DNA from: Anthoceros angustus | Taxonomy: Eukaryota > Plantae > Anthocerotophyta | Direction: 5' to 3' | Assembly (NCBI GenBank): GCA_010909165.1 | Contig: MU008159.1 | Location: forward strand, 2,232,001 to 2,296,000 | DNA: 64,000 bases | Shown: positions 20,526 to 64,000 of the stretch, in pieces | How positions within the stretch are numbered: the stretch's first letter is position 1 | How the letters are laid out: every line of letters starts with the position of its first letter | Notes under the pieces: model-generated | Databases searched by the model: none | What the model was told of the DNA's origin: nothing | The model's input: only the letters and a program-made list of their open reading frames with translations | Translations under genes and position numbers: made by a program

Positions 20526-20684
20526 TGTGCATACAAAACCTACACAAGAGCGTTATGTCTGAAAATGTCGGAAGCCTAGAAACAGCATTCTAGCCGCCTA
20601 CATAGAATTGCTTCACATGCCAACCATCGAGCGTGGTGCGCTGATGCTCACATCTAGACATTAAGCCTACAGCTTGGCCACCTC

Positions 20685-36400: not shown

Positions 36401-36407
36401 TGTAGTC

Positions 36408-36740: not shown

Positions 36741-37869
36741 CTCCAAATACATCCCTCATGGCGTTCACCGCCCTCGTCACTGCCTCTGACCCCAACTCCC
36801 TTCACAATGTGCAGTTCTGCCCGTCACTAGCCGGTGACGGGCACCCCCCAAACACACGCCCATTACTTGCCTGCTGCCCTCTTGACACAACCCTCCTTTC
36901 GTGCACCAGCCTAGTCACTGCAGCTGAACCCAAGTCACTCCCCTTTCTACGCACATGGCCACAACTCGATGGTGACGGGCACCCCCCAAATCCCTGTCCG
37001 TTATGTGGCCGCTGCCCTCTTGCCACAGGCCTCCTCACCCTCTCTTGATTCACACCATCACCAGGCATGCACGTTCCATCAACTTGGGGTGATCGTGGTG
37101 TCGTCGACACCATGATATCATTGCTCGTGATAGCCTCCCTGCTTGCACTTGGTTCCCCCATGCGCACCATCCTACCTTCATGGTTCACCAATCCCGCCCC
37201 TCCCCTCCGATTCACTATCAGGTTGTGACTCACCTCATCTCGTCCACTGCATTCCACTCCCTCTATCCTCCTAATTATCCCCTCCACATCCACATCACCA
37301 CCACGTGCACCGGCAGTGCCTCCGCTCTCTTGCATTCTTCGTCTCGGAAATGCCACCAGATCAGGATCCATTTCCAATTCTATGTCGTTTAGCAAAAAAG
37401 TCATTTCCCTTGGTCTCCTAGCAATAGCCTGAACCTCTGGGGTCTTGTTATTCATTCCAAGCCTTATCCGCTATAGGAACTCCGCATCACCCCTCATCGC
37501 AAATCGCCCACAGAGGTTACATCGAGATCGCCCCTCTTCAACCTCCCATATTCGCCTCTTCGCTTGAGTACCTCCCATGCTTATTCTCAAACCAACCACC
37601 CATGCAATCACACGCATAAAATAAATATCAAATAAGTATATAAAAATTATAGTACTATATAGAATAACTTAATATTATAATTTAACAACTTTAGTATAAC
37701 CACTATTATCAAGAAAATATTGAAAACATGCAAACTAAAAAGGTTAAGAAGTCAAGTCGACAATGCATACTAATTGTTTTGTTGCGAGATAGTGAATATA
37801 CACAAGGTACATGACCCTCAACATCAACTCTTCTACATCCTTGGTTTCATGGTACCAACACAACAACAA

Positions 37870-38272
37870 AACTATTCCACATCCCTGCATCAACTTTGCC
37901 TTCAATTTCTTCCACTCCATCTGTGCGTAATTTAATGTCTCTATGTACTCTTCTTGCACGGCATTCCTTTTGGCCTCAAATGGTTCAGGGTTATACCAAT
38001 TGTAATCAATAAACAACTCTTCCCCATCATTCATGGTCCTTACTGCCCAAGTACAAATCCAATCAAGATGGTCGTTACTTAGTAGCTCATGCCCATCCGA
38101 CCTTTCTTCCCAAATGCAATTTTGCTTGATTGCTACATTTCCACTACTACTATTCATATATCCTCCCACATTCCCATATGCAACATGCCCATCGAGGTAC
38201 TCAATTGGGCCATCTGAACATCTTTATCCGGAGTCTATTGAAAGTCAATGCATACTTGCGGAAACTGCAACC
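37870..38272 (-). pseudogene. SET-domain C-terminal exon, copy 2
   Basis: Same GNVGGYMNSS...GEELFIDY motifs, with small indels relative to copy 1. Confidence 0.72.
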
Positions 38273-38609
38273 TGTAGTCTACTACTCGCCTCGCCAGATG
38301 CCTCGCCCTCCTCGCCCCGCTTGCGCCTCGCCCGCCGAGCTTCCGTGCCTCGGCTTGGCTCACCCCGCCCGCCCGCCCACGGCCGCGCCCGCCTCGCCCG
38401 CCTTGGTGCCTCGCCTCCTCGCCTGCCCACCTTCCGTGCTCGGCTTGGCCGCCCGCCTCGCCTCGCCAGATGCCTCGCCTCCGCCTGCCCCGCCCGCCCG
38501 CCTCGCCTCGCCAGATGCCTCGCCTCACCCTCGCCGCCCGCCCGCCCACGCATTTCCTCGCCTCCTCGCCTGCCCCGCCTCGCCTGGTTGTCCCTGCCCC
38601 GCCCGCCCA

Positions 38610-39065
38610 CTGCGTTCCTACCCTAAACCCTGCTCCCACCCTGCTATAAGATGAACCTTAAAAATGGCCGCGGTGGCTTGCCTAAGCCACTTGGCGCACT
38701 CCTAAAGTGGAACACAACGTCTGCAAAAAAATTTCCTTGTTGCGCATGCACGAAGAAACCACACTGCGGAAAAAAAAAAAGAAAGTTCCATTTGTGTGTA
38801 CCAGTGCTCGCAAAGTGGCCACTTTGGTGCGTCAGCTTTGGGCTGCTCATTTGGGTCGGTTTACCGAAGCGGACAAAAGAAAGCCGTGTGTGGTACGAAG
38901 AAAAGTTTAGCTAGAGAAAAAAAAGTGCCCCATCCCTCTATCCTCTTTGGTATGCCATAGTTAAACTCGGACCCAGAGGTTGGCCGGATGCGAAACTCGA
39001 CCCCGACTACGAAATCCCCGAGTTCCCGGAACAAACCGTATACGGCCGCGAAGTCACGCAACCTC
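38610..39065. mobile_element. Probable terminal region of the SET-bearing DNA element
   Basis: Non-coding and ends CACGCAACCTC, resembling the CACGATGCGCCTC end at 27026. Host-like sequence follows. Confidence 0.35.
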
Positions 39066-41466: not shown

Positions 41467-44400
41467 TCATTTCTGGTCCTTAAGCTCATGCTGCAACCAA
41501 CGGCGGAGTCAGCATCCGCAATCGTCGCCTCAATCCGCATCACTGCACAAGTGTTCAGCTGGGAGTACCTCTGAAACGAAATGAGCATGGAAGCCATAAG
41601 GAACCCTCCTCGGCAATGGCACGATGGCAACTGGCTGTGGATTCATCGTCTTTGCGTCAATCACCACTATCTCAGATTTCCTGCATCACCATCACTGCAG
41701 TCAGCTCCGAACATAATCGGGGATACACACCAAGTATTGTGAGATTATGCAGAGGATGCTATACATACTCCAGCTTCTCGTCGTATACAAAAGTGATCAG
41801 GTATCCGTCATCTTCTTCCACTGCCTCAGTCTTCGGCACAAAAATAGCCTCTGAGCCGTAGCGCTCGTCCCCATATCGGAAGACCCCTTTGATATTGTTG
41901 CCAACTTCCAGACCCTTGCCCAGTTGAGGCTCAGCAAATAGGTCAACTTTCACAACGGCTATCGCCTTCACATTTTCAAAGGCACTGATATAGGCAAACC
42001 GCTGCTTCCTGTCGCGAATTTCCCAAACCAGAAACTTGGTAGGTATTGAGGCCGTTTGTCATCAAGACAAGAGTCCCAAGAAAGCAATGGACCCGAAAGA
42101 AATCACACAGCGATTCAAGACCTTACCTTCCAACGAAATTCTCATTGATACGGGGAAAGTCCGCCGAAAAGTCTCCTATTCTTCTCTGTGAGGAGCCTCC
42201 ACTCTTCAAATTGAACCGGAACTCATACCTGCACATTGGCCCTACTCTTATCGTCAGGACGCTCTAGAATGTCTGTAGCAGGACAAAGGAAACTGACACA
42301 TGAAGCCAAGTTTTAGAGCAGGGAAGTACAGTTCATTGCCCATGTCCTCCATTGTCTTTCCATCGGGAGCAGAGACGGCATTCATGTTCAATTTTTTCAA
42401 GCGACATGAGTACAGCACAACTTCATCACCTTCTTCCCACGCATTCACTGTCATGGCCACAACAAACTATTGATCATTCCTGCGTGTACCATTGATGGCC
42501 AGAAAGTCTTGTGTATAAGGTTTAGAAAATTTACCATTGTGGAATACGTAAAATGGTGGAAGGTCAAACCACCGAATCTGACTTTCGTTCTTGGCATACC
42601 GTGGCAAGATCCCAAATCTGGACTTCCTAGATGCATCAAACTGCAAAACATGCCCTGTTTCCACCATTGCCTGCAGTAGAAGTGAAACGAAAGAGAAATT
42701 ACTTGGCCTGCCTATCCATTACCACATTGGGAGACATAACACAGGACCAGAAACCAGTAACCTGGTCAGTGAGGCAAAGTACCTTAGGCCGGAAAACCAC
42801 AGGCAAATCCATGAATATGGCAAAGTTTTGGGTTATAGCAAAATCGTGCATCATCACTGGTTCAGGAATAGTTATGGTAACAGGCTCTCCCAGCAAGCCA
42901 TCTTTAGAGATGACATGATAAGTGACAAACGGAGCCTTTTCAAAGCTGTAGCCATACGTGAACAGCTCCCCTGTCCGTCAATCACCAATTCAGTATATCG
43001 TCCACTTCCTGCTGTTTGTGAAATACGGGCTCAAGCAACAACCAAGGGTTCAGCAATCACACCTGTCAGGACATCAAGTTTTGGATGCGCAGTCAAGGGA
43101 TGATTCAGCTTAGATCCATAATCATAAAGTCCCACTGTTTGAAGATCTCCATCTTCGAGCACCCTCAGAGCATCTACAACCCATCTCCAGCATACAATGT
43201 GTAAGCAAGTGGACCATCACATGGCCCTTTTATCTAAGCTGAAAGGGCAATGAAATCTCTCACAGACCTGCAAAATATGAATGAAAACATGTACGTACAG
43301 GGTTTGTCGCCTTCATGTAAAGCAAAAACCTTGCCGCTGTGGAATGTGAGGGCCGTGTTACCTGCAATGCACAAAGGAATAACACTATGTCTATCAATGC
43401 CCGCCCACTCAGTCTGATCTATACAGCAACTTGGACTCTTACCTGTTCCAGTCCCTTTTGAATGGTCGAGAACACCAAACTTCTCACGAAGCGTATTCAA
43501 CAGGACAAAGGCCAGCCCAACTTTTCCCTTGATATCTCCCAACTGTCACAACCGAAGGAGAACAGATGAATTCCTCAACCGCTCACAGACTGTGAAGTAT
43601 AAACACACACAGGCAATGAAATACAGTTATTCACAAACCAACCTTCATGAACTTGGCAGCACCGTAGTACTCTTCTTGTTTGATCCGTGAAGTCCTCACA
43701 TACCTCGAAGCATAAGAAGCTTTTCCATTCTTGATCCGCACAGCATGAATCATTCTGCGCACTAGCCACATGTCATACGTTTTGAAGTTCTGGAGCAAAG
43801 TGGAATAACAAAACTTAACCAAAGCTAAACAAGCTTGTCCACCCTGCTGAATGGGCTGAAAGCGCCTTGCTGCCTCCATACCAATCAGTAACCTAATTCT
43901 TGAATGCAGCTTGGCGAATCATATTGACAATTTTTACATGAAAACGAGATCAGAATCATACCCATCCCCATCGAACCTGCATCAACAGAAAACGCAGCTT
44001 AGTGCTCCGCAATGTCTGTCCCGGTGCACCTCAGAATAAAGGTCACCTGCAGTACCTCCGCCCAAAAACATATCACAGATATGTGTGACGACAAAAACCA
44101 CAAGGAAGAAACACCAGCACATTGTACATGAAGTAGACCGGTAAAACACACCAGTGATAATTGCCGAAAGGTTCAAACTTGGGATTAGGTCCTACTCGTA
44201 AAAATTCTCCGTTCAGGCAGTCCTGCAAAAAACCACGGAACAGCAATTTCAGTCCCATCAGTAGAGCATCGGAAGAAATCTCCTGCATCCCAGGGCCCAC
44301 TTGTCCCGTGGATTGACGAAGTTCTAGCAGAAAGAAACAGGTGTGCATTACCGGCAGAATTCCGATGACTGCGAGATCCGTCTTCAGCGGAAACTCCTCT

Positions 44401-44606
44401 ACTGGTGCATAATTTCCCGACAGGTAGTAATTGGGCTTGACCACATCGGACGCCCACACCAGGGCCTTCTCCAAGACGTCCAAGAGGGGAGCAGCAACGC
44501 GGCCTGTGACAGTTGGCCGAAATTCGTTGTCCTCCTTCTCCCCCTCACGTCTCGGGGCTGCATCAGCCACACCTGCGTTTTTGTGGGAAATAGTGTAATC
44601 CGCCAT
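41467..44606 (-). CDS. CCD1: Carotenoid cleavage dioxygenase 1-like, 14 exons, apparently intact
   Basis: LSGNYAPV; [10 protein letters not shown]; 15-bp FDGDG microexon at 43961-43975; the four Fe-binding His motifs TAHPK, MMHDF, VFHN and RVPYGFH; DFPRIN; SEAIFVP; EDDGY. All introns are GT-AG. Last exon HELKDQK* is inferred. Confidence 0.93.
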
Positions 44607-46660
44607 CTCGAGACTGGCCCAGGTCGGCTGCAGAGAGAAGCCGACGCTGGAGTGCGTCAGGAAGTGCAACCCCCTTAAGCTGGGAGACCCGCTGTGAAGT
44701 GGCCAGTTACGAACCGCACATTGGCGTCCTCGCCTCACCGATACTTGGCCATAATCTCCACGGATTGCTATGCCAACTTATCGATTGGACTCAGCTCACG
44801 CGCGTGGCGTGTCCCGCTCACCTTTTTCCCATCTTGCCATCCCCATAAACAATAAACTAATAATGCCATGGCATGTCTGAGATTTCCGTCCAGGGTGAAT
44901 CGGTGAGAAGTCTAGAATAATCGCTTCCGCTTTTGGTTATTCTAAGTTGCGCTCACTGGGAGTCGACCATGTCTCCGTCTCTTCCAACCTTATCTAGTGC
45001 TGCCATGATCTCACTTTATGTGTTCAAACATTTCCGGAGAGTTCAGGCAAGTGAGCTTGCAAACAAGCTTTTGCCCTGGGGATCCACAGCCATGTTCAAT
45101 TTTTTTGATCTTGACAAGGTAGTGCTAGAGATCGAAAGGCAGAAGAGGAAGCCTGGGGATCATCAGGACCACCATCAGGACCGCGTTTCCCTTTCTTCCA
45201 ACCTTATATAGTGCTGCCATGATCCCTCTCTACGTGTTCAAACATTTCCGGAGAGTTCAAGCAAGTGGGCTTGCAACAAGCTATTGCCCAGGGGATTCAC
45301 AGCTATGCGCACATTTTTTGATCTTGACAAGGTAGTGCTAGAGATCGAAAGGCAGAGGAGGAAGCCTGAGGATCATCAGGACCACCATGATAATGCCTCG
45401 TCACATCTGTTCCAAAGCTCGGATTCCGACGTGGAAGGCGACGATGAAATTGCAAGAGGAGAAGGATATGGAGAAAATGAGGAAGGAGGACCGGTACCTT
45501 GTACAGCTGCAGATCAACAACTGATGCGCATACAACCTCCGGCCCTGTATGTTGGTTGCAATTGCAAGCACACGCTTGCCAAGATGATGATATTGAACAT
45601 CTAAGCCCATGGACATGGCTGACTGACTCAGAGTTTTGTTGTGGGCAGGGTTCCAGAGGCTCAAGAAGACGTAGAGTTGCGACAAGTGATGGCTCAGATG
45701 GTGAATGCCGTCTATGATTTTGAGGCATCCCGACGACTGCAGCAGCTCAAAAACGGCACAAGGAAGAGGCACGAGATGAAAAGGGTGATTCACAACCTCG
45801 CGGACTTTCTGGGATCTGAAACCTGTGATGAAGAGCCGACCATATCCCAGGAGGAGGTGGTGGCAAAGTTGCAGAGAGCCGGGTTCCAGTTGAAAGGATC
45901 TGAGCACTGTCAGCCAGGCCAGGGGCCCTACAAGATATGGTTCCTCGTCTTCGTCAAAGACTCTGCAAAGTGCACATGTCGAAGCGCGCCCGAAGTTGTG
46001 GTTGCTGTTCGCGGGACCATGAAATCCGTGACAGAGCTGCGGTCGGATTTTAAAGTGCTGCGACAGGAGCTACATGACGACGGAAGGTACGAGAACCTGT
46101 TCCAGGCGGTGGAAAACGAAGTGCTCCTGAATGGGCCCGAAAATGTGTGCACCTCTACCTCAACAAAAGTACCGTCTCGCCGCCCCCCTCGTCGCACTAG
46201 GTTCAGTAGAAGAGGTGGTTGAGGTCGCACACCGTCACGCAGTGGCTCAATTTTCCGTATCCTCTTGAACGGGAGGTTATCCAATTGCATCGGCCTGAGT
46301 GAGCAATGCATGCCCACACCCCAATCTTCTAGTTGCTTGCATCTGTGATGGATTTTCTCTGCACCGGGCGCAACCAAGGTGTGCTCAGTGCGTTTGTGAT
46401 CAAACCTCCATGCACTGACCTGCTTTGTCCTGCTTCTGCTAAATTTGGATGCTTTCTTGCATTCTGTATGTTAATTATGCCTCTCCTGTGAATACTAGTG
46501 TGGCCATCTCCACCTTGCAATTGTTGCGAGGTGACGGATACTTTAACTACCATGCGGATTTTTTAAAGGTGATGAATGCATTCTGGTCTCACAAGCTCCC
46601 ATCATTAGCAGCTCCGTCTCTCAAATGGCGACTTTTAGCCATGCCTTCTGCTGTTACAGT
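43570..46660. repeat. Segmental duplication copy A (CCD1 5' part plus lipase)
   Basis: Colinear with 48075-50835, including introns and 3' flank. Confidence 0.9.
45305..46300 (+). pseudogene. Class-3 lipase pseudogene (two internal deletions, no GHSLG)
   Basis: Matches 49043-50496 up to ENVC, jumps to CACCTCTACCTCAACAAAA, then jumps again to ACCGTCTCGCCG. Its first ~210 bp are also duplicated at 44965-45180. Confidence 0.9.
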
Positions 46661-48074
46661 CGCACAGCAAGTTCGTCCTGGGCAAATTTTTTTTTAATGG
46701 AGCAGTCTCGTCCTGCACCAAGAACTCGCTCACTGCACCACTCACTTTAGTCCTCATCAGGAGCTGTGTCAAACTTCCTGATTTCAAGGTCTGTTAGTGG
46801 GGCTTCTTTTTCTTTTTATCAGGGGCACTGCTACGGACGTTTGTAGTGGACATTATTTCATATCTCAACAAGCTGGTTCCCTCCCCCTTTTTAGCTTCTA
46901 AGTGGCCCAGCGGGTCTGAGGCAAAGGTTCCCTGACGGTCATGTGCCAGCCTTCCGAGTTGTCCCTGGCGCAGAAGAACGTTTTCTGATCATTGAAAACA
47001 AAAACAATAGTCTCTAAGTTTCAGATTGATTCCGAAGGGTGGATCCACTGCCACACTGAAGATTTGAAATTGTTGACTATCGTGCAGGCAGGCACAACCG
47101 GGGAAGGTGGATGAAAGATCCCTTGGTGGCGTGGATTAATTGCTTGGCACCAAGTTGAACATGGCACTTCATGCACCTTTCCATCCACAGTGCACCAAAG
47201 ATGGTTCTCCCTCTTTCAGATCGGTATGGAATGTACTCCAATGAGCCAGACACTCACACTTTCACCTGGAGCCGAAGAAAGGAACATTTCAGTGCAGCTT
47301 ACAACAACAGTACATGGTTACCTCTGGAATCCACATTGCTGTAGGATGACAAGAGTGAAGCTAGCTCACCTGCTCCAACCATCTGAACCTAGGATTGACC
47401 AAGGCTCGGAGATGGTCACCGCTAGGCGTACGACACTTGAGCCATCCTCGAGCAGACGAAGTTTGTGAGGATGCCAGTGCTCCCAAAATATTACACCCCC
47501 TGACCTTGTCCTTTTCTTGTTATATGTACGACAATTTAATTACGGACCACATATAAAGCGTGGATGTCACGCAATGAGGGACAACATGTGCGCGAACGTG
47601 GTGTGGAGGGCGTTTACAGACGTAGCCACTAGCTCAAGCTCAGTCGCTCAGGCTCAAATATTAAAAACTAGTACTCCAGCCCAGAGCCGGTGCTCCTCCC
47701 CAGTGTGAACGTGTGACGTGAGCCACTGACCGAATTATAGGAGAACAGGGATAGAGAGAGGAGAGCAAAGGGGATGTATCTGCTCCTGATGGAAAGCACA
47801 CCATCTTTCTCATTTTCGCTCACGATATGCGTTGCAAAGTGGCGTGCAACATCGGGAATCGACAGAACGGCCGGCAAAGCCATGATACATACGTCATATT
47901 ATTCCTCTTTGAATATGAACTTCCTCCCATCGAGATACCTCCCCGCCAACAGTATGGGGTAAGCAGTGCACGCTGTTCCATATAATCAAGGCCACGTGTG
48001 GTTGATTGCTACAATGCTAAGGATTGACTTTGTTCCTAGCATCCAACCCACGCCTGTGATGTCACGCAATGTTA

Positions 48075-48770
48075 GATTTCTCAACCGCTCTCACTCTACG
48101 AAGTACGAACACACAAACAAATGCCCGCGACCAACCTTCATCAACTTGGCAGCACCGTACTACTCTCCTTGTTTGATCCGTGAAGTCCTCACATATGTAC
48201 TTGGAAGCATAAGAGGCTTTTCCACTCTTTATCCGCACTGAATGAATCATTGCACTAGCCACTTATCATACGATTTGAAGTTCTGGAGCCAAGTGGAATG
48301 AAAAAACTTAACGAAAGCTAAGCAAGCTTGTCCACCCTGCTGAGTTTGCTGAAAGCGCCTTGCTGCCTCCATACCAATCAGTAACCTGATTCTTCAATGC
48401 AGCTTGACAATTGTTACATGAAGACGAGATCAGAATCATACCCATCCCCACCGAACCTGCATCAACAGAAAACGCAGCTTAGCGATCCGCAATGCCTGTC
48501 TGGGTGCACCTCACAATAAAGGTCACCTGCAGTACCTCCGCCCACAAACATATCACAGATATGTGTGACGACAGAAACCACAAGCAAGAAGCACCAGCAC
48601 ATTGTAAATGAAGTGGACCGGTAAACCACACCAGAGATAGTTGCCGAAAGGTTCAAACTTGGGATCTCGTCGAAATTCTCCGTTCAGGCAGTCCTGCAAG
48701 AAACCACGCAACAGCAATGTCAGTCCCATCAGTAAAGCATCGGAAGAAATCTCCTGCATCCCAGGGCCCA
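48075..48770 (-). pseudogene. CCD1 pseudogene fragment (exons 2-4 only)
   Basis: [21 protein letters not shown] (deletion in the RVGPNP motif); FDGDG altered to FGGDG; exon 1 and exons 5-14 absent. Confidence 0.9.
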
Positions 48771-49042
48771 ATTCTACCGTCGACAGACTGCTTCAGAAAC
48801 ATTCGATCATGTCAGAGAGTTCCGTCCAGGGGCAAATCGGTGAGAAGTCTACCATAGTTGCTTCCACTTTGGTTATTCTGAGGATTTGTTGACTCAAGTT
48901 GCGGTCACTGGGGGTCGACCGCGTTTCCCTTTCTTCCAACCTTATATAGTGCTGCCTTGATCCCTCTCTATGTGTTCAAACATTTCCGGAGAGTTCAAGC
49001 AAGTGAGCTTGCAACAAGCTCTTGCCCAGGGGATCCACAGCT

Positions 49043-50496
49043 ATGCTCAAATTTTTTGATCTTGACGAGGTAGTGCTAGAGATCGAAAGGCAGAGGAGGA
49101 AGCCTGGGGATCATCAGGACCACCATGATAATGCCTCGTCACATCTGTCCCAAAACTCGGATTCCGACACGGAAGGCGACGATGAATTGGCAAGAGGAGA
49201 AGGATCTGGAGAAAATGAGGAAGGAGGACCGGTACCTTGTACAGCTGCAGATCAACAACTGATGCGCATACAACCTCTGGCCCTGTACGTTGGTTGCAAT
49301 TTCAAGCGCAAGCTTGCCAAGATGATGATATTGAACATCTAAGCCCATGGAATGGCTGACTGACTCAGAGTATTGTTGTGGGCAGGGTTCCAGAGGCTCA
49401 AGAAGTCGTAGAGGTGCGACATTTAATGGCTCAGATGGTGCATGCCGTCTATGATTATGAGGCATACCGACGACTGCAGCAGCGCGAAAACGGCACAAGG
49501 AAGAGGGACAAGTTGGAAAGGGCGATCCACAAGTTCGCGGACTTTCTGGGATCTGAAACCGTTGAAGAAGACCCGACCATATCCCAAGAGGAGGTGGTGG
49601 CAAAGATGCAGAGAGCGGGGTTCCAGTTGAAAACAGCTGAGCACTGTCAGCCAGGCCAGGGGCCCTACAAGATATGGTTCCTCGTCTTCGTCAAAGACTC
49701 TGCAAAGTGCACATGTCGAGGCGCGCCCAAAGTTGTGGTTGCTGTTCGCGGGACCATGAAATCCGTGAAAGACCTGCTGTCGGATTGGAACGTGCTGCGA
49801 CAGAAGCTACATATGGACGAAAGGTACGAGGAGCTGTTGCAGGTGGTGGAAAACGAAGTGCAACAGAATGGGCACGAAAATGTGTGCATCACGGGTCACT
49901 CTCTGGGTGCGGCTTTGGGACTCCTGGTGGGCAAGGCTATGGCGACCAAGCAAACGCCTGTGGACGGCCATTTCTTCAACCCGCCTTTTGCCTCCTTCAC
50001 CTGGTTCGACAGCAACCTGCTGCGGCGGCTGGAAAGGGACTGCAAGCTTCTTCTGCTGGCATCTCATATGGTGATGAACTCTTTTCATGACGACGACAAG
50101 GGCACGAGTCAGTGGTTGCTTGACAGTCACACTAAATTCTGGAGCGTGACGACTTGGACGCCGCACCTCTACCTCAACAAAACCGACCCCATCAGCAGTG
50201 GCTACATCAACTTCTTCCAGGACATCCAGGGCATCAATCCTCACTTCAATTCTGCGTTTCTCAATTGGCAGGCAGAACTGTCTCGGCCGGTGATGCACCT
50301 TACCCTCTCGTCGCTGATGAACACCAAGAAGCTTCCCGACCACCTGCTTCCTTCCGCTATAATCACCGTCTCGCCGCCTCCTCGTCGGAGTAAGTCCAAG
50401 ATAAAGACGTGGGTGAGGTCCCACACAGTCTCGCAGTGGCTCAATTTTCCTTGTCCTCTTGAACGGGCGGTTGTCCAAGTGCGTCGGCCTGATTGA
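49043..50496 (+). CDS. Class-3 lipase (alpha/beta hydrolase, At4g10955-like); exons 49043-49284 and 49386-50496; 450 aa
   Basis: VVAVRGT, nucleophile GHSLG, FNPPF, LYLNKTDPI (Asp), HTVSQW (His). A 101-bp GT-AG intron joins the frames. Confidence 0.88.
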
Positions 50497-50945
50497 GCAA
50501 TGCATGCTCACACCCCAATCTTCTAGTTGCTTGCAGCTGTGATGGATTCTATCTCTGCACCGGAAGCGTTTGTGATTTGACCTGCTTTGTCCTGCTTCTG
50601 CCAGATTTGGATGCTTTCTTGCATTCTATATATTGATTCCTCTCCTGTGGAATAGTAGCCTAGCAGTCTCCACCCTGCAAATCTTTTGCAAATCTTCGGA
50701 GGAGACGGATACTGTGCCTACCATGCTGATTTTTTAAAAGGTGATGAATGCATTCTGCTCTTACAAGCTTCCTTGGTTGGCAACTCCTTTTTCTCTCAAA
50801 TGGCGACTTTTAGCCATGCCTTCTGCTGCTACAGTTGTTGAAGACCCAGCTGACCAGCTTGAACAGTTCACACCACTCACCGAACAGACACGCCCGACCA
50901 TCATCCCTGCTCAACCGTTGCACCTCCTCACTCACCTGCACCTAC

Positions 50946-53030: not shown

Positions 53031-54164
53031 AACAAGAGTAACTGACGAAACTGATCAGAATAAAGAAAACTACTGTCGTACCTTTGTGTATTTCCTTATG
53101 GTATCGAGCACGTGGATCGACATGCCACCGAAGGGTCACCTCATGGCTCGTGGCGGGGAGCTCGTCTTCGGCAAGACCGCGATGAGGAACACGCCTCCCT
53201 AACCACCTTATTCCCCTCACGGTTTCTACGCGAATGTAGACCCGTGAAGAGAATCGAACAAGTAGCCACAAATCAAAGACAGAGCAAACCCCCTACCTTC
53301 GACAACCGCGTGCTGAGGAAGCTCTACTAGATTGAAAATAAGGTCCATGTTGAGACCCGCCTGCTGCACAGCTTCCTTGGCATCATTTTGAGAGACGTGA
53401 AGGACCTCCTCCAGGCGTGTGAGGTCCCAGCCAATCCCCCAATCCATCGCTGTCATCAGCGCTGTCCGTGAGTAAACCCAAACCATGTCCACTTCCAGGA
53501 GGCAGTGGAGGCGCTACCGGTAGTGCGGCCGGTGGCGGAGGTGCCGCTTGAGGTGCAAAGGCCCCGGTGGTGCAGTGCCACGTGGTGGCGCTCACGGCCG
53601 CAAATCCTATCGCCGCAAACCCTATCGCCCCACACTATGCTAATTTCCGCATAGAAATAAAGGAAAAGGATAGATTCACGGGTGTAGACTACGATGTCTG
53701 GGCTACCCGGATGCACGGACACCTTGAAGACGCAGACCTATAACAGCGTCTCTCAGCATTGGGGTTTGTCTCCGAACCCCATTTTGGCCCAACCAATGTA
53801 GAAATGCACATGTCTCAATTCACTGTTTTCAGCGATTTGTAAACCGACAGCCCATGCATCCGAGCCCAAAAGAACACGGAATGTGCCCAACGGCGTGCAT
53901 AAATGTTGGACACACCGTTGTACAACATGAACTTTTATGGCTTTCTAGAGCGATCGAGCGCACACCTTCCAAAACCGTCATGAAACATATATCTTTAAAC
54001 ACGAAAACACACAATAAAAAACTTGACTCGTAACCCAGCGTGAATAGTCCTGTAGAGCCTGAGAAGTCTATAAAAGCGCCGGACACCTACTTCCCATGTC
54101 ATCATCCTTCTTCGAAAAAAGTTTCACACCTACAACAACAACTGCCAACACTGTACTATCAGGC

Positions 54165-57100
54165 CTAATCCTCCGGGTCTGCCCTCTGAACATTTGCCAA
54201 GATGTACTCCGGAGTCACTATATCCATTGAACCAAGAGCCTGTTCGGAGAACTGACTCTCCGTGTTCGGGACAACCACGTCGTCGGCACCAAAGTCCTCC
54301 AGGTCCGCCTCCAAGTCGATAGGAGCTACATCAATCATGGCATCAGTGAGCTTCTCGGGATCCTCGTCTCTTCCTCTTGGGGTCACCCACATTTTCCTCA
54401 AAGTTAGCGCCCGCTGAGAACAACCATTGTACTTTCGACCGCTTGAAACCATTGATTGAGAAACCGCATATGGGTAATCTTGTTGCGGACTTATCTCCTT
54501 GGGCCAAAATGTGCCCGGCCCGCTTGAAAGGCAGCATATTTCCTCTTCTCGCCTGGGATAAGCATGGAACCCCACAATCCTGCTTGATGAACATTGAAGA
54601 CCTTGTATCGAGTCCACCGAGATCACATTTCTTCCACTCGGCAGCAAGTGCCGTGGACCCACTCCCCGCAAATCCATCGATGACCCAATCTCCTTCTATA
54701 GAGAAGCACTGCAGCAAAATGGACATTAGCTCCAAAGGTTTCGATATGGGCTTACTACCTTGTTGTCGAATGCTGTGTATACCAACTTCTTTACCACAGC
54801 ATCGCACTTAATCACCGAGCCCATGCCTTGTTGGCCCAAAGTCAACGAAATCGGTAACAATGGCACCGATTTAACTCTTGCGTTGGGTGACTTTCCGCAC
54901 CACCGATATAATGTCCATGTTGTCGTATACCTTGTTTTCCTCCGGACATTGGTTTTCTCCCAAACAAGGGACCGCAGAGCCATCCGTGCATACCCCCTCA
55001 AAGCGCTCTTACATCGGTGGTCCGTCCATTGCAAAACCACAATCCTGTATGAGTCGGTGTCGTTACCTCCACAAAGTGGTTAAGAATACCACTCAAGCTG
55101 GGCCTTCAATACATTTGTGTCTTCCGCTCCAAGTTTCAGCCCTCTTGGTAGATCCATCACCAGGAGCGTATAAGGTCGCTTACGAGCAAATCCCAACAAT
55201 TCCTGCATGGATCGGTTGAAAACCTGATAGCAAACCTTTTCCCGAGCTCGAACTATGAAATCACGAAGGTCGATGTCATGGACGCCTCTGCGAGCCACTC
55301 CTCTTCCATCTTTTTCCACGATTTAGCCGCCACGACCCAACTTTGAAATTGTTCTGGCAAATTTCAAGGTTGGCAACATCATGGAGCCGCCAACAAGCCA
55401 ACCAATCCAGGTTAGAATTCAGAATCGAGAGACAAAACCCATGAGGTTCATTCAAAGGAGAAGGCGAGTGCGGACGTCGGCGCCTGCCGCTGCTCTTCCT
55501 CGCTTCCTCAGCGGAAGACGGCGGACGTCCGGCGACTGTATTGCCCCACTCCTTGAAGGGGTTCGACCCCCGCACTGTGTGCCGGACGTCGCCCGCCTCC
55601 TTGAAGGGGAGGGAAGAGCGCCGGCCGGACGCCCGCGACGGTGCCGCCCGCCTCAGGGAGGAATGCAGTGCGCCGACGTCCGGCGACCGGTGCCGCCCGC
55701 CTGGCGGGGCCGGGGAATGGTGTGCGCCGGACGTCCGGCGACTGTGCCGCGGAGGGTGAATGCGAGTGCGGACGTCCGCGCACTGCTGCATTCCCTTCCG
55801 CCTTCATCAAGAGGCGCGCCGACGTCCGCGCACTGCTGCCCTCTGCATCCTTCAGGGAGAGCGCAGCAGCGTGCGCCGGACGTCCGCGCACTTGCTCTTC
55901 CCGCCTCCGCCCCGGAGACAGCAAGTGCCGGACGTCCGCGCACTGCTATTGCCCTCGGCCCTTCGGGGAGAGCGCAAGCGGCGCCGGACGTCCGGCGCAC
56001 TGCTGCCCTCTGTTCCTTCGGGGAGAGCGCAGCGGCGCCGGACGTCCGCGCACTGCGCTGCACTTCCTCCACACCCATCCCGCGGGTTAACAAAAGGCGC
56101 CGGACGTCCGGCGCACTTTCTCCAGAAAAACAACAACAGAGGAAAGGAAGACAGGAGGTTCAATCAAAGCAAGCTTACCACTGAATCGAAGCAGGCCTGA
56201 AACTGCGCAACGTCTTCTTCCTTCGTGTGCTTCGGGAATCTTTCTTGAGCCTCTGCATAGGAGCTGCAACCCAAGGACTTGCTGAGAGCCTTTTGAATCA
56301 AGTGGAGGTTCTTCTTTTTTGTGACCTCGTCATGCATGCCTCTCATATCGAGGTGGCCCTGGATAACCTTCTCCGTTGCGCTCAAGAGTATCTGCTCCCC
56401 AATTTGTCCTGGTGGAAGCCCTTGAAAGCACCGAAACATCTTCACAGGTATTTCCTTCATCTGACCTTGCGAGGGATCTGGCCGAGATGGCCCATCTTCT
56501 GTCACCTTCCTAAGCGCTTTCGCCCTTTTGGAAATTCCAGCCACAGCTTGGTGAGACTGTTCCGGAAGCTCAAGCCTCTCCCATTTGTTGAAGATGGTAT
56601 CCACATTCTGCCACAGCTGTCCTTCGCATTTGGCTACGCATAAGGTCAATGTCTTCTGATCAACCTTCTTTTGCTTTGCAGCCCGGCTTGCATTACCTGG
56701 AAGATCATCAATTAGCCCGATGGCATGATTCCATTTCCGGTCTAGAGAAGGCATCGCTTGAATTTGCAGCTCATCCTTCACATATCTCACTTGCTCGATG
56801 AAACTCATTTTCTTGCGCCGGTCCGCATTCACATTGTGATCCGTTGCCAATACTCGCATCTCTTGAGGTGTAAGTCCTGCATACACATGCCCCTCCATAT
56901 ACTTGTAGTATGGCTTCTCTGGAAATTGGACGGCAAGGCTCTTCACCGCTGGAAACAATGATTCCCGCCAAGAACACCGAACCTGTACTCCCCCCTGTCG
57001 AACTTCTTCGTGCTCCAATCTTTCTTGCTCGAACACTGTTGTGGATCTACCATCACCAATATGGGAAGAACTCCCTCTTCTACTGGCCCTTTCCGCATCT

Positions 57101-58165
57101 ACCGCTCTAAGTAGCTTGCCCATGAGACATCCACCCTACGGATCTGCGCATCGTGGGTTAGGAAATCTGGACTGTGAAGGTACTGCAAGCCAATGATTAA
57201 CGTGTTTTGTCAACCTTCTTGTGGGCACTCTCACGAATCTGGGGGGATCGTTGGACACAATATCATGCTCCAACTGTCTTCGTCACGACATGGGCCGAGT
57301 GAGGATAGGCGTGAAGTGGCCCTCTTCCTTTGCTTCCCGCCTTCTCTTTTCCCGATTGACTCTTTTGCGTTTCTCGCTCCTGTAATTTTCTTTCTCCTTG
57401 TTGCTCCACTTCTTTCTCCGGATTCTTGGGCACTTTGGGCTCATGCGTGATATTCCGTAAGCACCCGCAAACGATGCTCGGCTCAGATCTCCACCCTCTC
57501 GTGGTGACTCGTCACGAATACCTCATCGCATCCTCCGATGCTCCGTTTGTTTGTTTTATGGAGATTCAGCTCCTTGAGTCCTTCTCTTCCATCTCCACTG
57601 TCGTGTCCATTGGAGGCATCATCTTGAGTCATTCACTTCATCCTCGAAAGCCACCTTCCGCTTGCTTGAACTAGGCCGCTTGGAGGACAAAGCTCGGAAG
57701 TCTCGCAAATAGAAGCCTTTGTGGGCTTTGTCTTGCTCACACGGCCGAGAAGAGGGTCACTGTGATTCCTCGGATCATGTGCCGTTGGAGCTCGCAATAA
57801 AATGCCTCCCCATCCTGCACATATAAAGTCTGTTAGGGGAAGTCGTCACAACCCGGAACAGGCCCACAATGAAAGGCCTTTCAGGCCCCACCACCGACGG
57901 CGGCGTTAGGAGGAATAGGGAGGATAGTAGGCGGCCGGTTAGGGCACACTGAGCTGCAGTTTTGGACGGGATCGGGGACTTGTTCCACTGTTACTGACTC
58001 AAACGCCTTCAGCGCATCCTGCACAGCTACCAAGGAGGCCAGTACCTGTTCTTGAGCAAGCGCCTCCATGGCTCTGACATTCCTACTACTTTCATTTGAT
58101 GGCAAAGAAGACGCCATGGAGGCCACCCTCTTCTTCTTCCCACTCGCAAATCTTGGGGTCGACAT
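54165..58165 (-). pseudogene. ParB/Srx-like domain fused to a beta-class N6-adenine/N4-cytosine DNA methyltransferase; intron-containing, several frame disruptions
   Basis: QIRRVD...PILVMVD...VLGGNH (56957-56972)...VYAGL...LATDHN; motif IV-like LLVMDLPRG (55143-55154); LVWEKTN (~54950); KPLELMSILLQCFSIEGDWVIDGFAGSGSTALAA (motifs X/I, ~54640-54740); acidic tail. Confidence 0.82.
55465..56115. repeat. Array of CGGACGTCCG palindromes in the ParB-MTase intron
   Basis: About 13 exact or one-mismatch copies at ~50-bp spacing. GTAAGC donor at 56178 on the minus strand. Confidence 0.92.
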
Positions 58166-58569
58166 AAGTTGTGGAGCTAAATGAAGCCTACACACAACCC
58201 TAGCTGGTGCACTACAGCAGAATGCGATGAGAAATGAGGCGAATAGGAATGTAAGAAAACCATCGTAAGCAGTACGACTAACCGTTTCGAAATGCACTTG
58301 GCACAATTACGTCAAATTAATCGTGCGAAAACATAATTCTAGTCCTGGATCAGCTCGAATCCGATAGGGTGAAATCCTAGGTTGCCATCATTCTGCATCT
58401 AATTTGACGTTTGGGCCATGGAAATTTGATGGATGAAACCTTTCACTTAAAAGCGGACTGCCCTAGCTCACTAGCCCCAAACTTCGAAGATCCCCATGTG
58501 CTGTAATATTGTAGCTCATTTATATCAACTTTAGTATGCTGCATATATAGCCATACTACGAATCAGGCA

Positions 58570-58915
58570 AGTGACCCAATGCCGAAGGCCGAGGAACATA
58601 CAATGATGAGGTCCTTGGAACCCTATCGTCGACCTAAAACTCTAACTCCTAAACCCAAAGACCAAGGAACTATCTTAATGTTGGGTAGGCAGCTTTCCGC
58701 AGGATAAGATAGATCCAAAGTGCCGAAGGCCAAGGAAATGCAAAAGGTTACCCACTGCCGAAGGCCGAGGAACATACAATGAGGAGGTCCTTGGAACCCT
58801 ATCGTCGGCCTAAAACCCTAATTCTTGAAACCAAAGACCAAGGAACTATGGGCTCTCCGCAGGGTAAGATTTATCCAAAGTTCCGAAGGCCAAGGAACTG
58901 CAAAAGGTTGTGGGC
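58570..58915. repeat. Tandem duplication, ~175-bp unit
   Basis: GCCGAAGGCCGAGGAACATACAATG at 58581 and 58757. Confidence 0.85.
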
Positions 58916-58999
58916 GATGAGGACCTCAAAAAGCAGGATCCCAAATAGACCCAGAACATCGAAGGCCAAGGCCTTCATCGGAAATAAAAGACCTAATCC

Positions 59000-60620
59000 T
59001 GAGGTAAATTAGTCGCACCCGCAGTCGTCGGTCTGTCGGTCGTGAGATTCCATGTGACCGACTCTTCCTCGCGGACTCCCATTCTTCGAAGCTGATGTCG
59101 GAGCACACTCATATCCTCGCCCCGCCCTGGACAGATCGTAACCGCATAAGTCCCAATTGCTCAACGACAAAGATAAGACACACCAAACTTCACATGCCTC
59201 ACCTTCCCCTGCTGGCGGCTGGTCCCACTCAGGCTCTCCAATGCCAAAGCTTTCCAGTTTCTGCTCAAACTTGTCATTCACCACATTCAAAGCATTCACC
59301 TCTTCCGACGTCCAACCTCCAAGGTTGGTTCTCGTGACATAACAGAATCCAATGACGAATATGATGCAGGATTCGTCAAAATACTTCGCGGCCACCAACT
59401 GTTGCAATTCAAGTTGACCAGGGCACCTTCCCCAAGGCTTCAGTCTTCTCCACTTAGCCGCGTGCCCTACCAGTCGAGCTCTCATCAGCGGATGATCCAT
59501 GGCTACAGAGTAGAACTGAGAAAATTGCAACAAACCCTAAGGTTCTAATTGATTTGCAAAACCCTAACCCTATGAACTGCACTACAAGTCGTGCAAGACT
59601 GCATGCACCCAACAGCCTCTAGGTATGCAACTTACCTCACATGCCCCGCATGTCGAGCGACGTTGAATTCTCGTCATAAGTTCCGGAGGCTTAAATGCAA
59701 GCCGTTTCCTCCTCACTTAATGACCAGCCATACATGTTCAAAAACCCCCGCATGGAGCATCCAGGAGGAATAACAATCTTGATATGCGATATTGGCAATT
59801 GAAATTAGGGTCCATCCATCACGCATCTATTCGTGTCGTACAAGGGGCATCTATTTACTTCTCCACATTTGAGACTCTAGCCAACAACAAACATTTCCCC
59901 CATGTTCAGGGGAATATGGATGCTCATCTACAGCCTGTTACGTCTGAACTTCTAAGCGTGTCTATGCTGACGAACCTCTGCCTGCCAGAACGTATCTGCT
60001 GGCAAGAATACAAATAAGACTTGTTCCAGTGAAGTTGATAGAGAAACCACCACCGGCCGCCGGGATACTCTGCCCGTCGGCTCGATGAAGTCTCGACAGT
60101 GTGGACCGCCGCCCATTCAGGTGCCGATCCGAGCCTCAACATCCTCGGTTAATAGCAAACCACAACCGGGGGCCCTAAAGTGATCCCACTTGCGCACCCT
60201 GATCTTGTTCTCAAGCCAGTGCTCACTTCGTGAATAATTGCATCTTCGCAAACCGTCGGGATACCGCCTGGATACCTCTAGGTACCAAGAAAAGTGTCAA
60301 CCCGCCTAGGCATCCAACCGGCGAGTGTGACGTTGATGGAAACGCACCTCCTCTCCACCAACTAACCCCAAGAGCCCTCCCTCACGGGAGTATCATTGAA
60401 GAAGAATAGGGTCCTCCACCGGATAGTTTGCACATGCATCCAAGGCGGAGGACCTATATCGCCTCGATCCTCCGGGCCCCGCCTCCTAACGAGGAAGTTC
60501 CCGATCCGACTCCACTCCACCCATACAACGGATACTTGTATCACTCGCCCCAGAGGCCGGATTTGTGGGTGTGATGTCCATCTTCGCACGCAAGGGAGAC
60601 CGGGAGGCACCTTACCCTAA
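59000..60620 (-). pseudogene. Unknown multi-exon cargo gene divergent from the transposase
   Basis: Protein-like non-repetitive frames and splice-like signals (TTGCAAT/CTCAG acceptor near 59516, GAGGTAAG donor near 59635). No family recognised. Confidence 0.45.
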
Positions 60621-60799
60621 GCTGCAGCACGGACTATTTTGCCTCAATCGAGTTGAAGGAACAAATACCCTTGCCAAAGACCAAGGGTCGAACTCGCCAG
60701 CCCACCGGTCGATGAGCCCTTGAGAGTTAGGGCACCAAAACCTAATCAACTTACTAAAAGTAGCATATGAATGTGTCCTGCCATCACCAGCAACTTCCG

Positions 60800-63700
60800 A
60801 TGGCCTTCAGTTTGGGAAACACTCCGTGGGGGAAGCGGAGTCGTGGAAACGTTACAGACGAACATCCTAGTGGTAAGCTTTGCTAGAAGCGATGTATTCT
60901 ATTCTTGTCTTTTGCCCTAACACATAACGTCTTTTTGCAGAAGCAACGTCTTTTTGCATTACCCGTGTGTCTATTCTCCGGAAAGCATAGCAACTCGTCT
61001 AAGGCCAGAGTATTTGTACCTCGTATCAAACAATTAGCTCGACTTGAGTCCGACTCAGAGTCTGACAGCCCCCCAACACATGATCACGAACGGCTACAGC
61101 AGCGAAAGTGGCATAATAGGCGGACTACTGGACGAGAAGGCCGAACTCGGGAAGATTATTCTTAGGAGATAAGCTCGCCCCTCCGAGGACCATGAGCCTA
61201 GTTGGGAGCTTCACACCGAGGTTGACGAAGAAAGGGAGAGCACATACCCGAGTGATTCAGAGGACCAAGGGAAGACAGAACTCAAACAATGAGTCTCAAG
61301 ATGTAGTGCCGAGGCGCTGTGATAGCGAGTGTGAAGTCCAGAGCTCCGGCAAGGACTCTGACAACATCACTGCGGAACAGAGGCCAACAAGACACCCAAA
61401 GCCACTAGCTGAAACGTTGCAACAGAATCCTCCACAAAGAAAAGCTCGAAGAATACCGGGACGGGGCAGCAGCAAAGAGTGCAAAACCCAAAGTGAAAAG
61501 GGACTGGCTGAAACCATGCTGCTCACACATGTGTTTACGTGTTTGAAAGAAAGATGCAGGATCGATACCGATTTCTAAACATGGATAGATCCCAGCAGGA
61601 GACATATCTGCAATCGCTAATTGTATGGGACAAGGACGATTCCACGGGCCAGAGGGTAAGCAACTATATATTAGGCGAGGTACGTATTCGCTGCTGTGTC
61701 AGAGCATTTCGTGAGTGTATTGTATCGGGCATACCAGGTATGAGGACTTGAAACAGGGTTAGAGGCAATATACCTTGGTCGCCGGCCATGAGATTCCGTA
61801 GAGGTCCTACTACAACAGGTCTAGCCGCACTGGCTTGGATGGACAGGTTGTTCCGGAATCTTGCAGAACGCCTTCCAAACGTGGAGGTGTTCAACCTTCC
61901 TGACAGTTACACAAAAGGGGAAATCTTTTTGGACTATAAGCGACATATGGAGCGAGCAAATCTGGCGAATATTTGCCACTCATACTTTTGCAAACTCTGG
62001 AACAAACACTTTCCGAGGGTGAAGATTCCAAAGTCCAATCGATTTAGCGTTTGCCACATGTGAAGACCTAAAGAGAGGGATCAAGAATACACGGTACAGG
62101 CAAACGCAAGGTACACCTCGATCCACTATTGGACTAACACCATGTGGCATGGTAATGATTGTAAGTCGAAACGTATTTTGTCCGCATGTCTCAATCCATC
62201 TTTTCCGTCTCCGAGGCGTGCCTCTGTGGATCACAACTTGGGGCAAAAGCGCCGGACGTCCGCCAGAAGCCGGACTCCCCGCCTCGCTGGGTGCAAATGC
62301 TCCCAATGCGGACGTCCGCGAAGCTAGAGCTATGCTCCCAGTGGGGCGCAGATGCGGGACATCCACCGAGCTGATCACTGCGGAGCAATGCTCCCAATGC
62401 GGACGTCCGCCTGACAGTCACCGAGCAACCCAGGCTGACGTCCGGCAAGCGGTGCCCGGGAGCGTACACGGACCGCCCAGCCGGAGCATTTGCTCTCGCC
62501 GGACGTCCGTACGGCTGGGCTACCATTGGGAGCATTTGCTCCCGGCCGACGTCCGACGCAAACGGTCCCGCCTGGCTAAAGCAAGGCCGCCGGACTGGGC
62601 CTGATGGGAGAATTCTCCCAATCGCCGGACGTCCTCACGGCCAAGGCTCGCGCCTAGATGGGAGCATTTGCTTGCTATGCGCCGGACGTCCGCCCACTGC
62701 GCCTGCCGGGGTCCGTGGCTGACGTCCGCCGCTAGACTCCGAGTCCGGGCGGGGCCATTGTTCCCCGTGCATCACTTGTGTGCATCACTTTCTGAGAGGC
62801 ATACCTTTCGAACTATCCTTCGTTGTCGAGGAGAATTTAGATTGTCTGTTTTGGTGCTCTTGTTCCTAATCTTTGTTTTCTGCCTCGGACGTCTGGCACT
62901 TGGTCTCCGTTGGCGAGGACGAGACTGAACGTGTGCATGCCTATTCTGGCGCAGAGAAACTAGAGGAAGACTTGGAGGACCACAGAATTCAGGTGATAGC
63001 AGAACGAGCCAAGATGATCAAACATAGAGGAAAATGCTACGCTGAGCCACACCACTACATAGGACTCTCTATTGACGGTATGGATCAACAGAAGACCGGA
63101 CTTCCGCATTTCCTCCGGCCGCCAAAGTGCTGGACGCTCAGGTGAATATTCATGTGGTTGGGTGCATGGTGCACAATTATAATTGGACCACCAAGGTATA
63201 TCTTACCTTTCCTAACCTTCGTAATGATTCCAATCGACCATCGGATCATCCAGGATATCATCCTTGGGTACGAGAGTGTTGAGTGTTGTAAGCTAGACAA
63301 CACAATGAGAGAGAACAAGAACCAGCTACTATTTGCTTATTTGAATATGCTTATCGAGTTGGGCGTTTTGAGAAGATCAAGGTTGGTTTCTTGATGGTTG
63401 GACACACGCATGACCGTGATCGATCAAATGTTTAGCCGATTTTCACCGCCCCGGCACAAGGAGGCTTTTACTTTGCCTCAAATGTGCTAATTTTAGAGAA
63501 GGCATATTTTCCGAGACCTCAAGTGAAGTGTCTTATCGAGGTGCGACTTTAGAAGTTTTGTATGGCCAATCAAGAAAGGGTCCAGAGGATTTGACCGGTT
63601 TGTCGTTGAGCAACCGAACAAAAACTCTTTCCAGCATCAATTCAAGATTACAAAAGAAGATCAATATGGTCATGGGGCCGCTTATCCGAAGCAAAGAGTT

Positions 63701-64000
63701 CTCCACATCTATACAGTGGGAACCGGAGGACGGCCTTCGCCCCGAGAAGGATTCCAACCACGTACATTCTCGGCTCCTCTAGTTGGTTTACAGCCAAAGA
63801 GGACACACCGAGCAGCAAAAGCGCCTGAATTGTTTTTCAAATTTGAGACGGTCTCGAAAGCTCATTCGCTTATATCCTGCGAGGACCGGGTTTGGTGGAG
63901 CTTGTTCGAAAGACCAGAGGCTCGTCCGTGCCTTGATGGAGGGAAGGATCTTCCGTCCTCCACGCCTTGGAGATGGTATGACAGAAAAGTGCGGAGGCCA
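60800..64000 (+). pseudogene. Sola1-like (DUF7869-type) DDD transposase; introns at ~60873-60940 and 62111-62954; frameshifted
   Basis: SYFCKLWNKHFPRVKIPKSNRFSVC..C; LSIDGMDQQKT.LP; LDNTMRENKNQ; GFLMVGHTH..IDQMFSRF. Confidence 0.82.
62245..62900. repeat. Array of CGGACGTCCG palindromes in the transposase intron
   Basis: About 10 exact or near copies, interleaved with AATGCTCCCAAT / TGGGAGCATTT in both orientations. Confidence 0.9.

What the first reader, a model, noticed from the sequence alone, without database searches (positions are those of the whole stretch)
53668..64000. Plant DNA transposon carrying a ParB-fused, phage-like amino-DNA methyltransferase
Seen: one element holds a Sola1-like transposase (+) and a spliced minus-strand gene. 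That gene has a ParB/Srx-like GGNH domain followed by MTase motifs in beta-class order (DLPR, then WxK, then KP...D-x-FAGSGST). Known: this order is typical of the prokaryotic N6_N4_Mtase family, ParB-MTase fusions are common in phages, and canonical plant DNA methylation is 5mC made by unrelated enzymes. Eukaryotic amino-MTases of prokaryotic origin are known (bdelloid rotifers, Marchantia), so the novelty must be checked. Inference: this may be a mobile 6mA/4mC-writing system that marks its own DNA, for example against silencing or to regulate transposition, and may be a vehicle by which such enzymes enter plant genomes.
Basis: partly seen in the sequence, partly recalled or inferred. Interest (0 to 1): 0.93.

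Follow-up and report, generated by a model that had tools for sequence, protein, structure and literature searches.

The report
Plant transposon carrying ParB-methyltransferase gene
This is a broken copy of a plant cut-and-paste jumping gene whose family carries a second gene, a bacterial-type DNA-binding (ParB) part joined to a bacterial-type DNA-tagging enzyme, plus its own short palindromes, which suggests a self-recognition system that I did not find described in the papers searched.

Summary
Confirmed in substance. A DUF7869 (Sola-like) DDD transposase (+) faces away from a spliced minus-strand gene with a ParB/Srx fold and a beta-class amino-methyltransferase domain. The pairing is a family trait: a Riccia sorocarpa element holds both genes between AAC-ended TIRs with a 4-bp TSD, and relatives occur in Chara and Adiantum.

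Corrections: (1) As assembled this copy is dead, with about 16 frameshifts and 2 stops. (2) Its catalytic motif is DLPR. A 39%-identical relative shares it, while other relatives have D-x-P-Y as phage enzymes do, so methylation by this lineage is doubtful. (3) The left end is probably 53742, not 53668; the right end lies outside the window.

Added: almost every relative with enough DNA carries its own repeated palindrome, here CGGACGTCCG in one intron of each gene. Best reading: ParB binds these sites, a self-recognition system like VANC/VANDAL, with methylation likely only in D-x-P-Y members. No activity was tested. I found no description in the papers searched; this scan has noted the family many times elsewhere in this genome.

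The parts
53742..53773 (+). Probable left terminus (begins AAC); 4 bases to its left read CTAT, the candidate TSD
   Evidence: 32-bp, 87.5% match to a sister end at 592-561 that also carries the palindrome; the Riccia TIR also begins AAC. Partner end is outside the window, so inferred.
54537..55389 (-). Methyltransferase exon region, beta-class order, about 8 frameshifts; 3' splice site near 55390 has no clean AG
   Evidence: PF01555 E 1.9e-9; profile hits E 1.8e-9 and 1e-12; frameshift-aware alignment
55143..55154 (-). Motif IV, reads DLPR (family norm D-x-P-Y)
54652..54678 (-). Motif I (SAM binding) DGFAGSGST, preceded by KP at 54741-54736
55390..56178 (-). Intron of the ParB-methyltransferase gene, position shared with relatives
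   Evidence: GT donor at 56178; same junction spliced in L006 and unspliced in L001; donors within one codon in Riccia L002, L003
55471..56110 (.). Palindrome array 1: 12 copies of CGGACGTCCG (8 perfect)
   Evidence: 27 hits in the window against 1.14 expected
56179..56955 (-). Open helical region after the ParB core (about 260 codons), candidate DNA-binding part
   Evidence: phmmer hits in Riccia, Chara, Adiantum, metagenomes; 39% to L006
56956..57221 (-). ParB/Srx-like core with VLGGNH; one stop at about 57101 and a frameshift at about 56950
   Evidence: fold of a relative matches only ParB/Srx proteins at the top
61540..62110 (+). Transposase exon before the catalytic domain, frameshifted
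   Evidence: tblastn E 7e-15 and 1e-11 with Riccia transposases for 61800-62060; weaker match to 61738
62111..62954 (+). Transposase intron (GT-AG)
   Evidence: Riccia transposase has a donor at the matching place
62253..62895 (.). Palindrome array 2: 10 copies of CGGACGTCCG (5 perfect)
62955..64000 (+). DUF7869 DDD transposase catalytic exon, 7 frameshifts and 1 stop; runs off the window

Best explanation
Shown: this is a decayed copy of a two-gene TIR transposon family of stoneworts, liverworts, ferns and this plant. One gene is a DUF7869 DDD transposase. The other joins a ParB/Srx-fold domain and a helical region to a beta-class amino-methyltransferase domain like those of phages. Each element carries many copies of its own palindrome in introns, spacers and near its ends. 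Inferred: the ParB-plus-helical part binds these palindromes as a dimer, as ParB binds parS, and so recognises copies of its own family. In members with D-x-P-Y the enzyme then probably adds N6-methyladenine (or N4-methylcytosine) nearby, keeping the element readable or controlling its transposition against host 5mC silencing, the role VANC proteins play for VANDAL transposons. In this copy's lineage motif IV became DLPR long ago, so the protein most likely kept binding (DNA and SAM) while methyl transfer was lost or altered. This copy makes neither protein.
For: Both genes lie divergently between TIRs (2883-13813) with TSD TAGA in Riccia L002; a DUF7869-type gene is also next to the fusion in Riccia L003 and Chara L010. 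A Chara model matches M.BceJIV Z 17.2, MboIIA 16.8, CcrM 16.5; the N-terminal domain's top eight matches are all ParB/Srx proteins, Z 6.5-8.7, next 4.5. All 18 copies of the Riccia palindrome lie inside the TIRs. Different repeated palindromes mark L002, L003, L004, L005, L008, L010, L011, L013 and the window (13 copies in the element, at most 3 of any palindrome per 10 kb elsewhere in the window). The arrays sit in the same two introns in Riccia and here. VANC motifs lie in introns, spacers and terminal non-coding DNA and differ by family (PMC5735166). DLPR is shared with L006 in a 100/100 clade at 39% identity; the nearest phage enzyme inspected has DLPY.
Against: No binding or methylation data. 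The transposase could be the binder. The ParB GxxR arginine is replaced in most members (GGNHS), so CTP-clamp behaviour is uncertain. No transposase was found within 10 kb in Chara L004, L005, L011, L013 (gappy loci). I saw no intact DLPR gene: L006 is also broken. CpG is only mildly depleted across the element and not in the arrays, which does not discriminate.
Confidence: 0.5

Rival explanations
1. The palindromes are transposase-binding sites and the ParB-methyltransferase protein is an accessory factor for pairing the ends or for transposition, like CACTA TnpA or the Harbinger Myb protein (from established knowledge); methylation is incidental.
For: Palindromes also occur 270-630 bp inside the TIRs in L002 and near the sister end at window 4-262. 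A second Riccia transposase with its own palindrome has no ParB gene within the fetched DNA, although the locus ends before its far side.
Against: Most copies lie in introns kilobases from the ends, and the visible left end of this copy has none. The long-kept SAM motif and D-x-P-Y argue for a catalytic role in most members.
Confidence: 0.22
2. One reading: the lineage in this window is an active 6mA/4mC writer that marks its own DNA, with DLPR a working variant.
For: Motif I, KP and W-x-K are kept in both DLPR genes despite 60% divergence, which implies selection on the domain.
Against: The aromatic residue that stacks the flipped base is missing (established knowledge of motif IV); both DLPR genes seen here are broken.
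Confidence: 0.15
3. The ParB and palindrome pair works as a partition or drive device, tethering excised element circles or biasing their inheritance, closer to plasmid ParB-parS than to anti-silencing.
For: Match of 182 residues to KorB, spanning its CTP and DNA-binding parts (Z 8.1, rmsd 9.1); palindromes of 14-20 bp resemble ParB-family sites in size (own knowledge).
Against: No ParA-like gene seen; the CTPase arginine is mostly lost; the elements are cut-and-paste type with TSDs.
Confidence: 0.06
4. The copy is not dead: the frameshifts are long-read assembly errors in repeats.
For: Repeat duplicates in the window differ by as many small indels as substitutions (47 vs 41; 29 vs 41), unlike host gene duplicates (1 vs 71; 3 vs 42).
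Against: Two in-frame stops, a damaged 3' splice site and several multi-codon deletions; 260 codons are clean next to dense breaks; the short-read relative L006 shows the same kind of decay.
Confidence: 0.15
5. Chance neighbourhood, chimera or bacterial contamination.
For: The right end is not visible and no reads could be laid on the locus.
Against: Spliceosomal introns shared with relatives, one palindrome in both genes, plant genes upstream, and the same layout in Riccia.
Confidence: 0.02

Closest known systems
Phage and bacterial beta-class amino-methyltransferases (PF01555; M.MboIIA, CcrM, M.BceJIV) and phage ParB-methyltransferase fusions
   Same: Fold, motif order IV before I, D-x-P-Y as in Salmonella phage S102 (DLPY), N-terminal ParB-like domain; full-length structural matches include viral ParB/Sulfiredoxin-labelled proteins.
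   Different: Eukaryotic, intron-bearing, on a cut-and-paste transposon; long helical region between the domains; no sequence-level phage match for the ParB part; DLPR in this lineage.
Sola superfamily DNA transposons
   Same: DDD transposase, 4-bp TSD, short TIRs, presence in non-flowering plants (PMC10741241).
   Different: Second gene and intronic palindrome arrays are not mentioned in the description read; subgroup Sola1 could not be tested.
VANDAL (MULE) transposons with VANC anti-silencing proteins
   Same: A second gene plus family-specific short motifs piled up in introns, spacers and terminal non-coding DNA (PMC5735166).
   Different: Unrelated transposase and protein; VANC motifs are not palindromes; VANC has no methyltransferase domain; function here untested.
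Methyltransferase-carrying retrotransposons (C5 DNMTs in Symbiodinium and charophytes; Dam-like domain of DIRS1)
   Same: A mobile element brings its own DNA methyltransferase (PMC5890265, PMC4738411).
   Different: Those are retroelements with C5 or PCIF1-like enzymes; DIRS1 domains are thought inactive; no ParB domain.
Marchantia DN4MT1 and bdelloid N4CMT
   Same: Eukaryotic amino-methyltransferases of prokaryotic origin; N4CMT is a structural match (Z 15.1).
   Different: Host genes with SPPY-type motifs, not transposon cargo, no ParB domain (PMC8885841; bioRxiv 2021.02.12.428880).

Membership tests
Beta-class amino-methyltransferase (N6_N4_Mtase) | Motif IV before motif I (permuted order) | tested here: met
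   DLPR 55154, then KP 54741 and DGFAGSGST 54678 on the minus strand
Beta-class amino-methyltransferase (N6_N4_Mtase) | Profile or fold match | tested here: met
   PF01555 E 1.9e-9 for the window piece; Z 14.5-17.2 to beta-class enzymes for a Chara relative
Beta-class amino-methyltransferase (N6_N4_Mtase) | Catalytic motif IV (D/N/S)-P-P-(Y/F/W) | tested here: not met
   Window and L006 read DLPR; other relatives read DFPY, DLPY, DIPY, DVPY, DAPY, keeping D and Y
Beta-class amino-methyltransferase (N6_N4_Mtase) | Methyl transfer to N6-A or N4-C | not testable with these tools
   No reads listed; needs assay
ParB/Srx superfamily | ParB/Srx fold | tested here: met
   Relative L008 (pLDDT 84): top eight matches all ParB/Srx; window core aligns to it; atlas neighbours PF02195
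ParB CTPase (chromosome-partition type) | GxxR motif with catalytic arginine | tested here: not met
   GGNH followed by C, S or T; only the Clastostelium protein has GGRHR
ParB CTPase (chromosome-partition type) | Binds a palindromic parS-like site | tested here: inconclusive
   Element-specific palindromes exist; binding untested
Sola superfamily | DDD transposase | tested here: met
   IDGMD, LDN, GHTHD-x-DQ; DUF7869 E 7e-55 for the Riccia relative
Sola superfamily | TIRs and 4-bp TSD | tested here: inconclusive
   Met in Riccia L002 (TAGA); only one end of this copy is in the window
Sola1 subgroup | Clusters with reference Sola1 transposases | not testable with these tools
   No reference set held; the original paper could not be read
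VANC-type anti-silencing system | Protein binds family motif and removes silencing in trans | not testable with these tools
   Only the layout of motifs is alike
Eukaryotic N6A-methyltransferase clades of Iyer et al. 2016 | Permuted (group 1) clades 1-3, or ParB-HTH-fused chlorophyte Dam | tested here: not met
   Text lists MT-A70, an S-motif PPR-fused clade and a Naegleria clade as permuted; the ParB-HTH fusion is a group-2 enzyme. Supplement not read.

The most novel reading that the evidence does not exclude
A eukaryotic cut-and-paste transposon lineage has carried a complete prokaryote-style read-and-write module since before stoneworts and land plants split: a ParB clamp that loads at family-specific parS-like palindromes and an amino-methyltransferase that writes 6mA or 4mC over its own element to counter host 5mC silencing, with palindrome and protein evolving together.
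Probability: 0.3. Interest if true: 0.92.

Novelty: new variant of a known kind. Interest (0 to 1): 0.72.

Why it matters
Land-plant DNA marks other than 5mC are rare and contested. A transposon family that carries its own bacterial-type amino-methyltransferase gives a concrete place to look for 6mA or 4mC (its own palindrome arrays in Riccia and Chara) and a route by which such enzymes reach plant genomes. ParB-parS recognition is a prokaryotic device; a working version inside eukaryotic transposons would be a new form of the transposon-host arms race, and a natural set of protein-palindrome pairs could serve targeted DNA marking. The DLPR lineage asks whether the writer was turned into a pure binder.

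Tried and rejected
Word-index protein searches with the 319-aa ORF and the methyltransferase piece found nothing; the full HMMER scan did. Hits P0015, P0022 and P0024 are peptidoglycan-binding repeat proteins, and P0011 and P0026 match a similarly short repeated stretch; all were dropped. Pfam, PHROG and PDB-sequence searches do not see the ParB part. No sequencing run was listed; the host species is unidentified. ORFs at 59012-59533 and 57884-58306 could not be tied to the gene: no Pfam hit for either, no atlas hit for the first, and no relative's N-terminal part matches that region. The start at 53668 was rejected as a terminus. No paper holds the term DUF7869; the Arkhipova 2023 review and the Sola paper were not held.

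Full report
Observation. They lie in different frames. The last piece matches PF01555 at E 1.9e-9 and phage methyltransferase families. On the + strand three short pieces match DUF7869, and Riccia transposases align over 61800-62060 and 62981-63540 at E down to 8.6e-25.

State of this copy. A frameshift-aware alignment to relatives gives 7 frameshifts and a stop in the transposase catalytic exon, about 8 frameshifts in the methyltransferase region, and a stop and a frameshift in the ParB core. The 3' splice site of the long intron has no clean AG. As assembled, neither gene works. Repeat duplicates elsewhere in the window show an excess of 1-3 base indels that host gene duplicates lack, so assembly error may add to the damage; no reads were available to check.

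Ends. A 32-bp stretch starting AAC at 53742 matches, inverted, a stretch ending at 592, next to four more copies of the element's palindrome. That match is far above shuffles; the 12-base likeness at 53668 is not (p 0.39). The Riccia relative's TIRs also start with AAC. I therefore place the left end at 53742. The two ends in the window point away from each other and belong to two insertions. The right end is beyond 64000.

Relatives. A full scan with the open 319-aa frame found 27 proteins, among them genes of Riccia sorocarpa, Chara braunii, Adiantum nelumboides, the amoeba Clastostelium, metagenomes and two sequencing runs; a profile added 17 Chara proteins. In Riccia L002 a DUF7869 gene (4215-8109, minus) and the fusion gene (10001-13195, plus) are divergent, as here, between TIRs at 2883 and 13813 with the duplication TAGA. 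In Riccia L003 and Chara L010 a transposase remnant lies downstream on the same strand. Four gappy Chara loci showed none within 10 kb. The closest relative (L001, L006; 39% identity) appears once with and once without a GT-AG intron at the junction where the window has its donor, which supports splicing and a eukaryotic home.

Folds. A Chara member (pLDDT 71) matches beta-class enzymes best: M.BceJIV Z 17.2, MboIIA 16.8, CcrM 16.5, rotifer N4CMT 15.1. The N-terminal domain of a metagenome member (pLDDT 84) returns only ParB/Srx proteins in its top eight, Z 6.5-8.7 against 4.5 for the next. These Z values are moderate, but the set is uniform and the atlas agrees. The GxxR arginine of ParB CTPases is mostly replaced.

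Catalytic motif. Riccia, Chara, Adiantum and metagenome members read D-x-P-Y, as does a near phage enzyme (DLPY). The window and L006 both read DLPRG and form a long-branched 100/100 clade on a single-exon tree (bootstrap not fully settled, deeper branches open). DLPR is thus an old lineage trait, not decay. By established knowledge the fourth residue stacks the flipped base, so ordinary methyl transfer is doubtful in this lineage, while the SAM motif is kept.

Palindromes. CGGACGTCCG occurs 27 times with at most one mismatch against 1.14 expected: 12 in the intron of the fusion gene, 10 in the transposase intron, 4 by the sister end, 1 in an exon. In Riccia L002 a different palindrome occurs 18 times, all inside the TIRs, including the same two introns. 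L003, L004, L008 and L011 each have their own, and Chara L005, L010 and L013 share one; the rest of the window has at most 3 copies of any palindrome per 10 kb. The short contigs L001, L006 and L007 show none, and L009 one imperfect copy of the L008 motif. This is what a family-specific binding site looks like. A ParB-fold protein is the natural reader, but the transposase is not excluded.

Mechanism. Shown: two-gene element, domain folds, family-specific palindromes, dead state here. Inferred: the ParB and helical regions bind the palindromes and recognise the element's own family; D-x-P-Y members add an amino-methyl mark, more likely 6mA given Asp in motif IV; the result is protection from silencing or control of transposition. 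The layout parallels VANC/VANDAL, where each family's protein binds its own motif in introns, spacers and terminal DNA (PMC5735166). I give this 0.5; a transposase-site reading 0.22; an active DLPR writer 0.15.

Novelty. Mobile elements with methyltransferases are known: C5 enzymes in retrotransposons (PMC5890265), inactive Dam-like domains in DIRS1 and Dam genes near Trichomonas transposons (PMC4738411). Marchantia DN4MT1 and rotifer N4CMT are host genes with other motifs. I found no paper on a ParB-fused beta-class enzyme in a DDD transposon, but the library lacks most subscription journals and Repbase. I class it as a new variant of a known kind. The scan has reported this family many times on other pieces of this genome; those notes gave leads and are not counted as evidence.

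Limits. Host species, right end, upstream exons and all activities remain open.

Noticed in passing
window 1-592: Right end of a sister element of the same family: terminus at 592, four CGGACGTCCG copies at 4-262.
   Followed up: partly
L011 5442-6092, 15522-16172, 17083-21558: In Chara the fusion gene lies among Ulp1-type protease genes (PF02902 E 1.3e-24) and a second, very distant ParB-like gene (E 1e-4 to the family profile) with its own palindrome TCGGAT-NN-ATCCGA (19 copies); possibly another element type using the same module.
   Followed up: partly
L002 18069-22093: A second Riccia DUF7869 transposase with a different palindrome (10 copies); its far side is outside the locus, so a ParB gene could not be checked.
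   Followed up: partly
L006 (SRR33208242) and L001 (SRR33208241): Closest relative is spliced, so probably transcribed, yet carries about three frameshifts and a stop; organism not identified.
   Followed up: partly
P0013, P0019, P0021: A transcript of the amoeba Clastostelium and two environmental proteins form a distant branch; P0013 has GGRHR and DTPT in place of the usual motifs, so the family is not limited to plants.
   Followed up: no
window 34870-38640 and 30900-32800: Tandem repeat duplicates differ by as many 1-3 base indels as substitutions, often at CG or CWG; assembly error in methylated repeats or a strong small-deletion bias.
   Followed up: partly
window 43700-50560: Tandem duplication holding a lipase-like gene (GHSLG motif; 49378-50496 open, the copy at 45641 broken) and a carotenoid-cleavage-dioxygenase-like fragment; names from motif reading only.
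   Followed up: no
window 20292-20546: Array of a 7-base unit (AACCTAC), telomere-like but not the usual plant repeat.
   Followed up: no
window 58568-58971: Short direct repeats (about 100-175 bp, core CCGAAGGCC) in the spacer between the two genes; probable promoter region or small insertion.
   Followed up: no
window 59012-59533 and 57884-58306 (minus): Two open frames upstream of the ParB core with no database match; possible first exons.
   Followed up: yes
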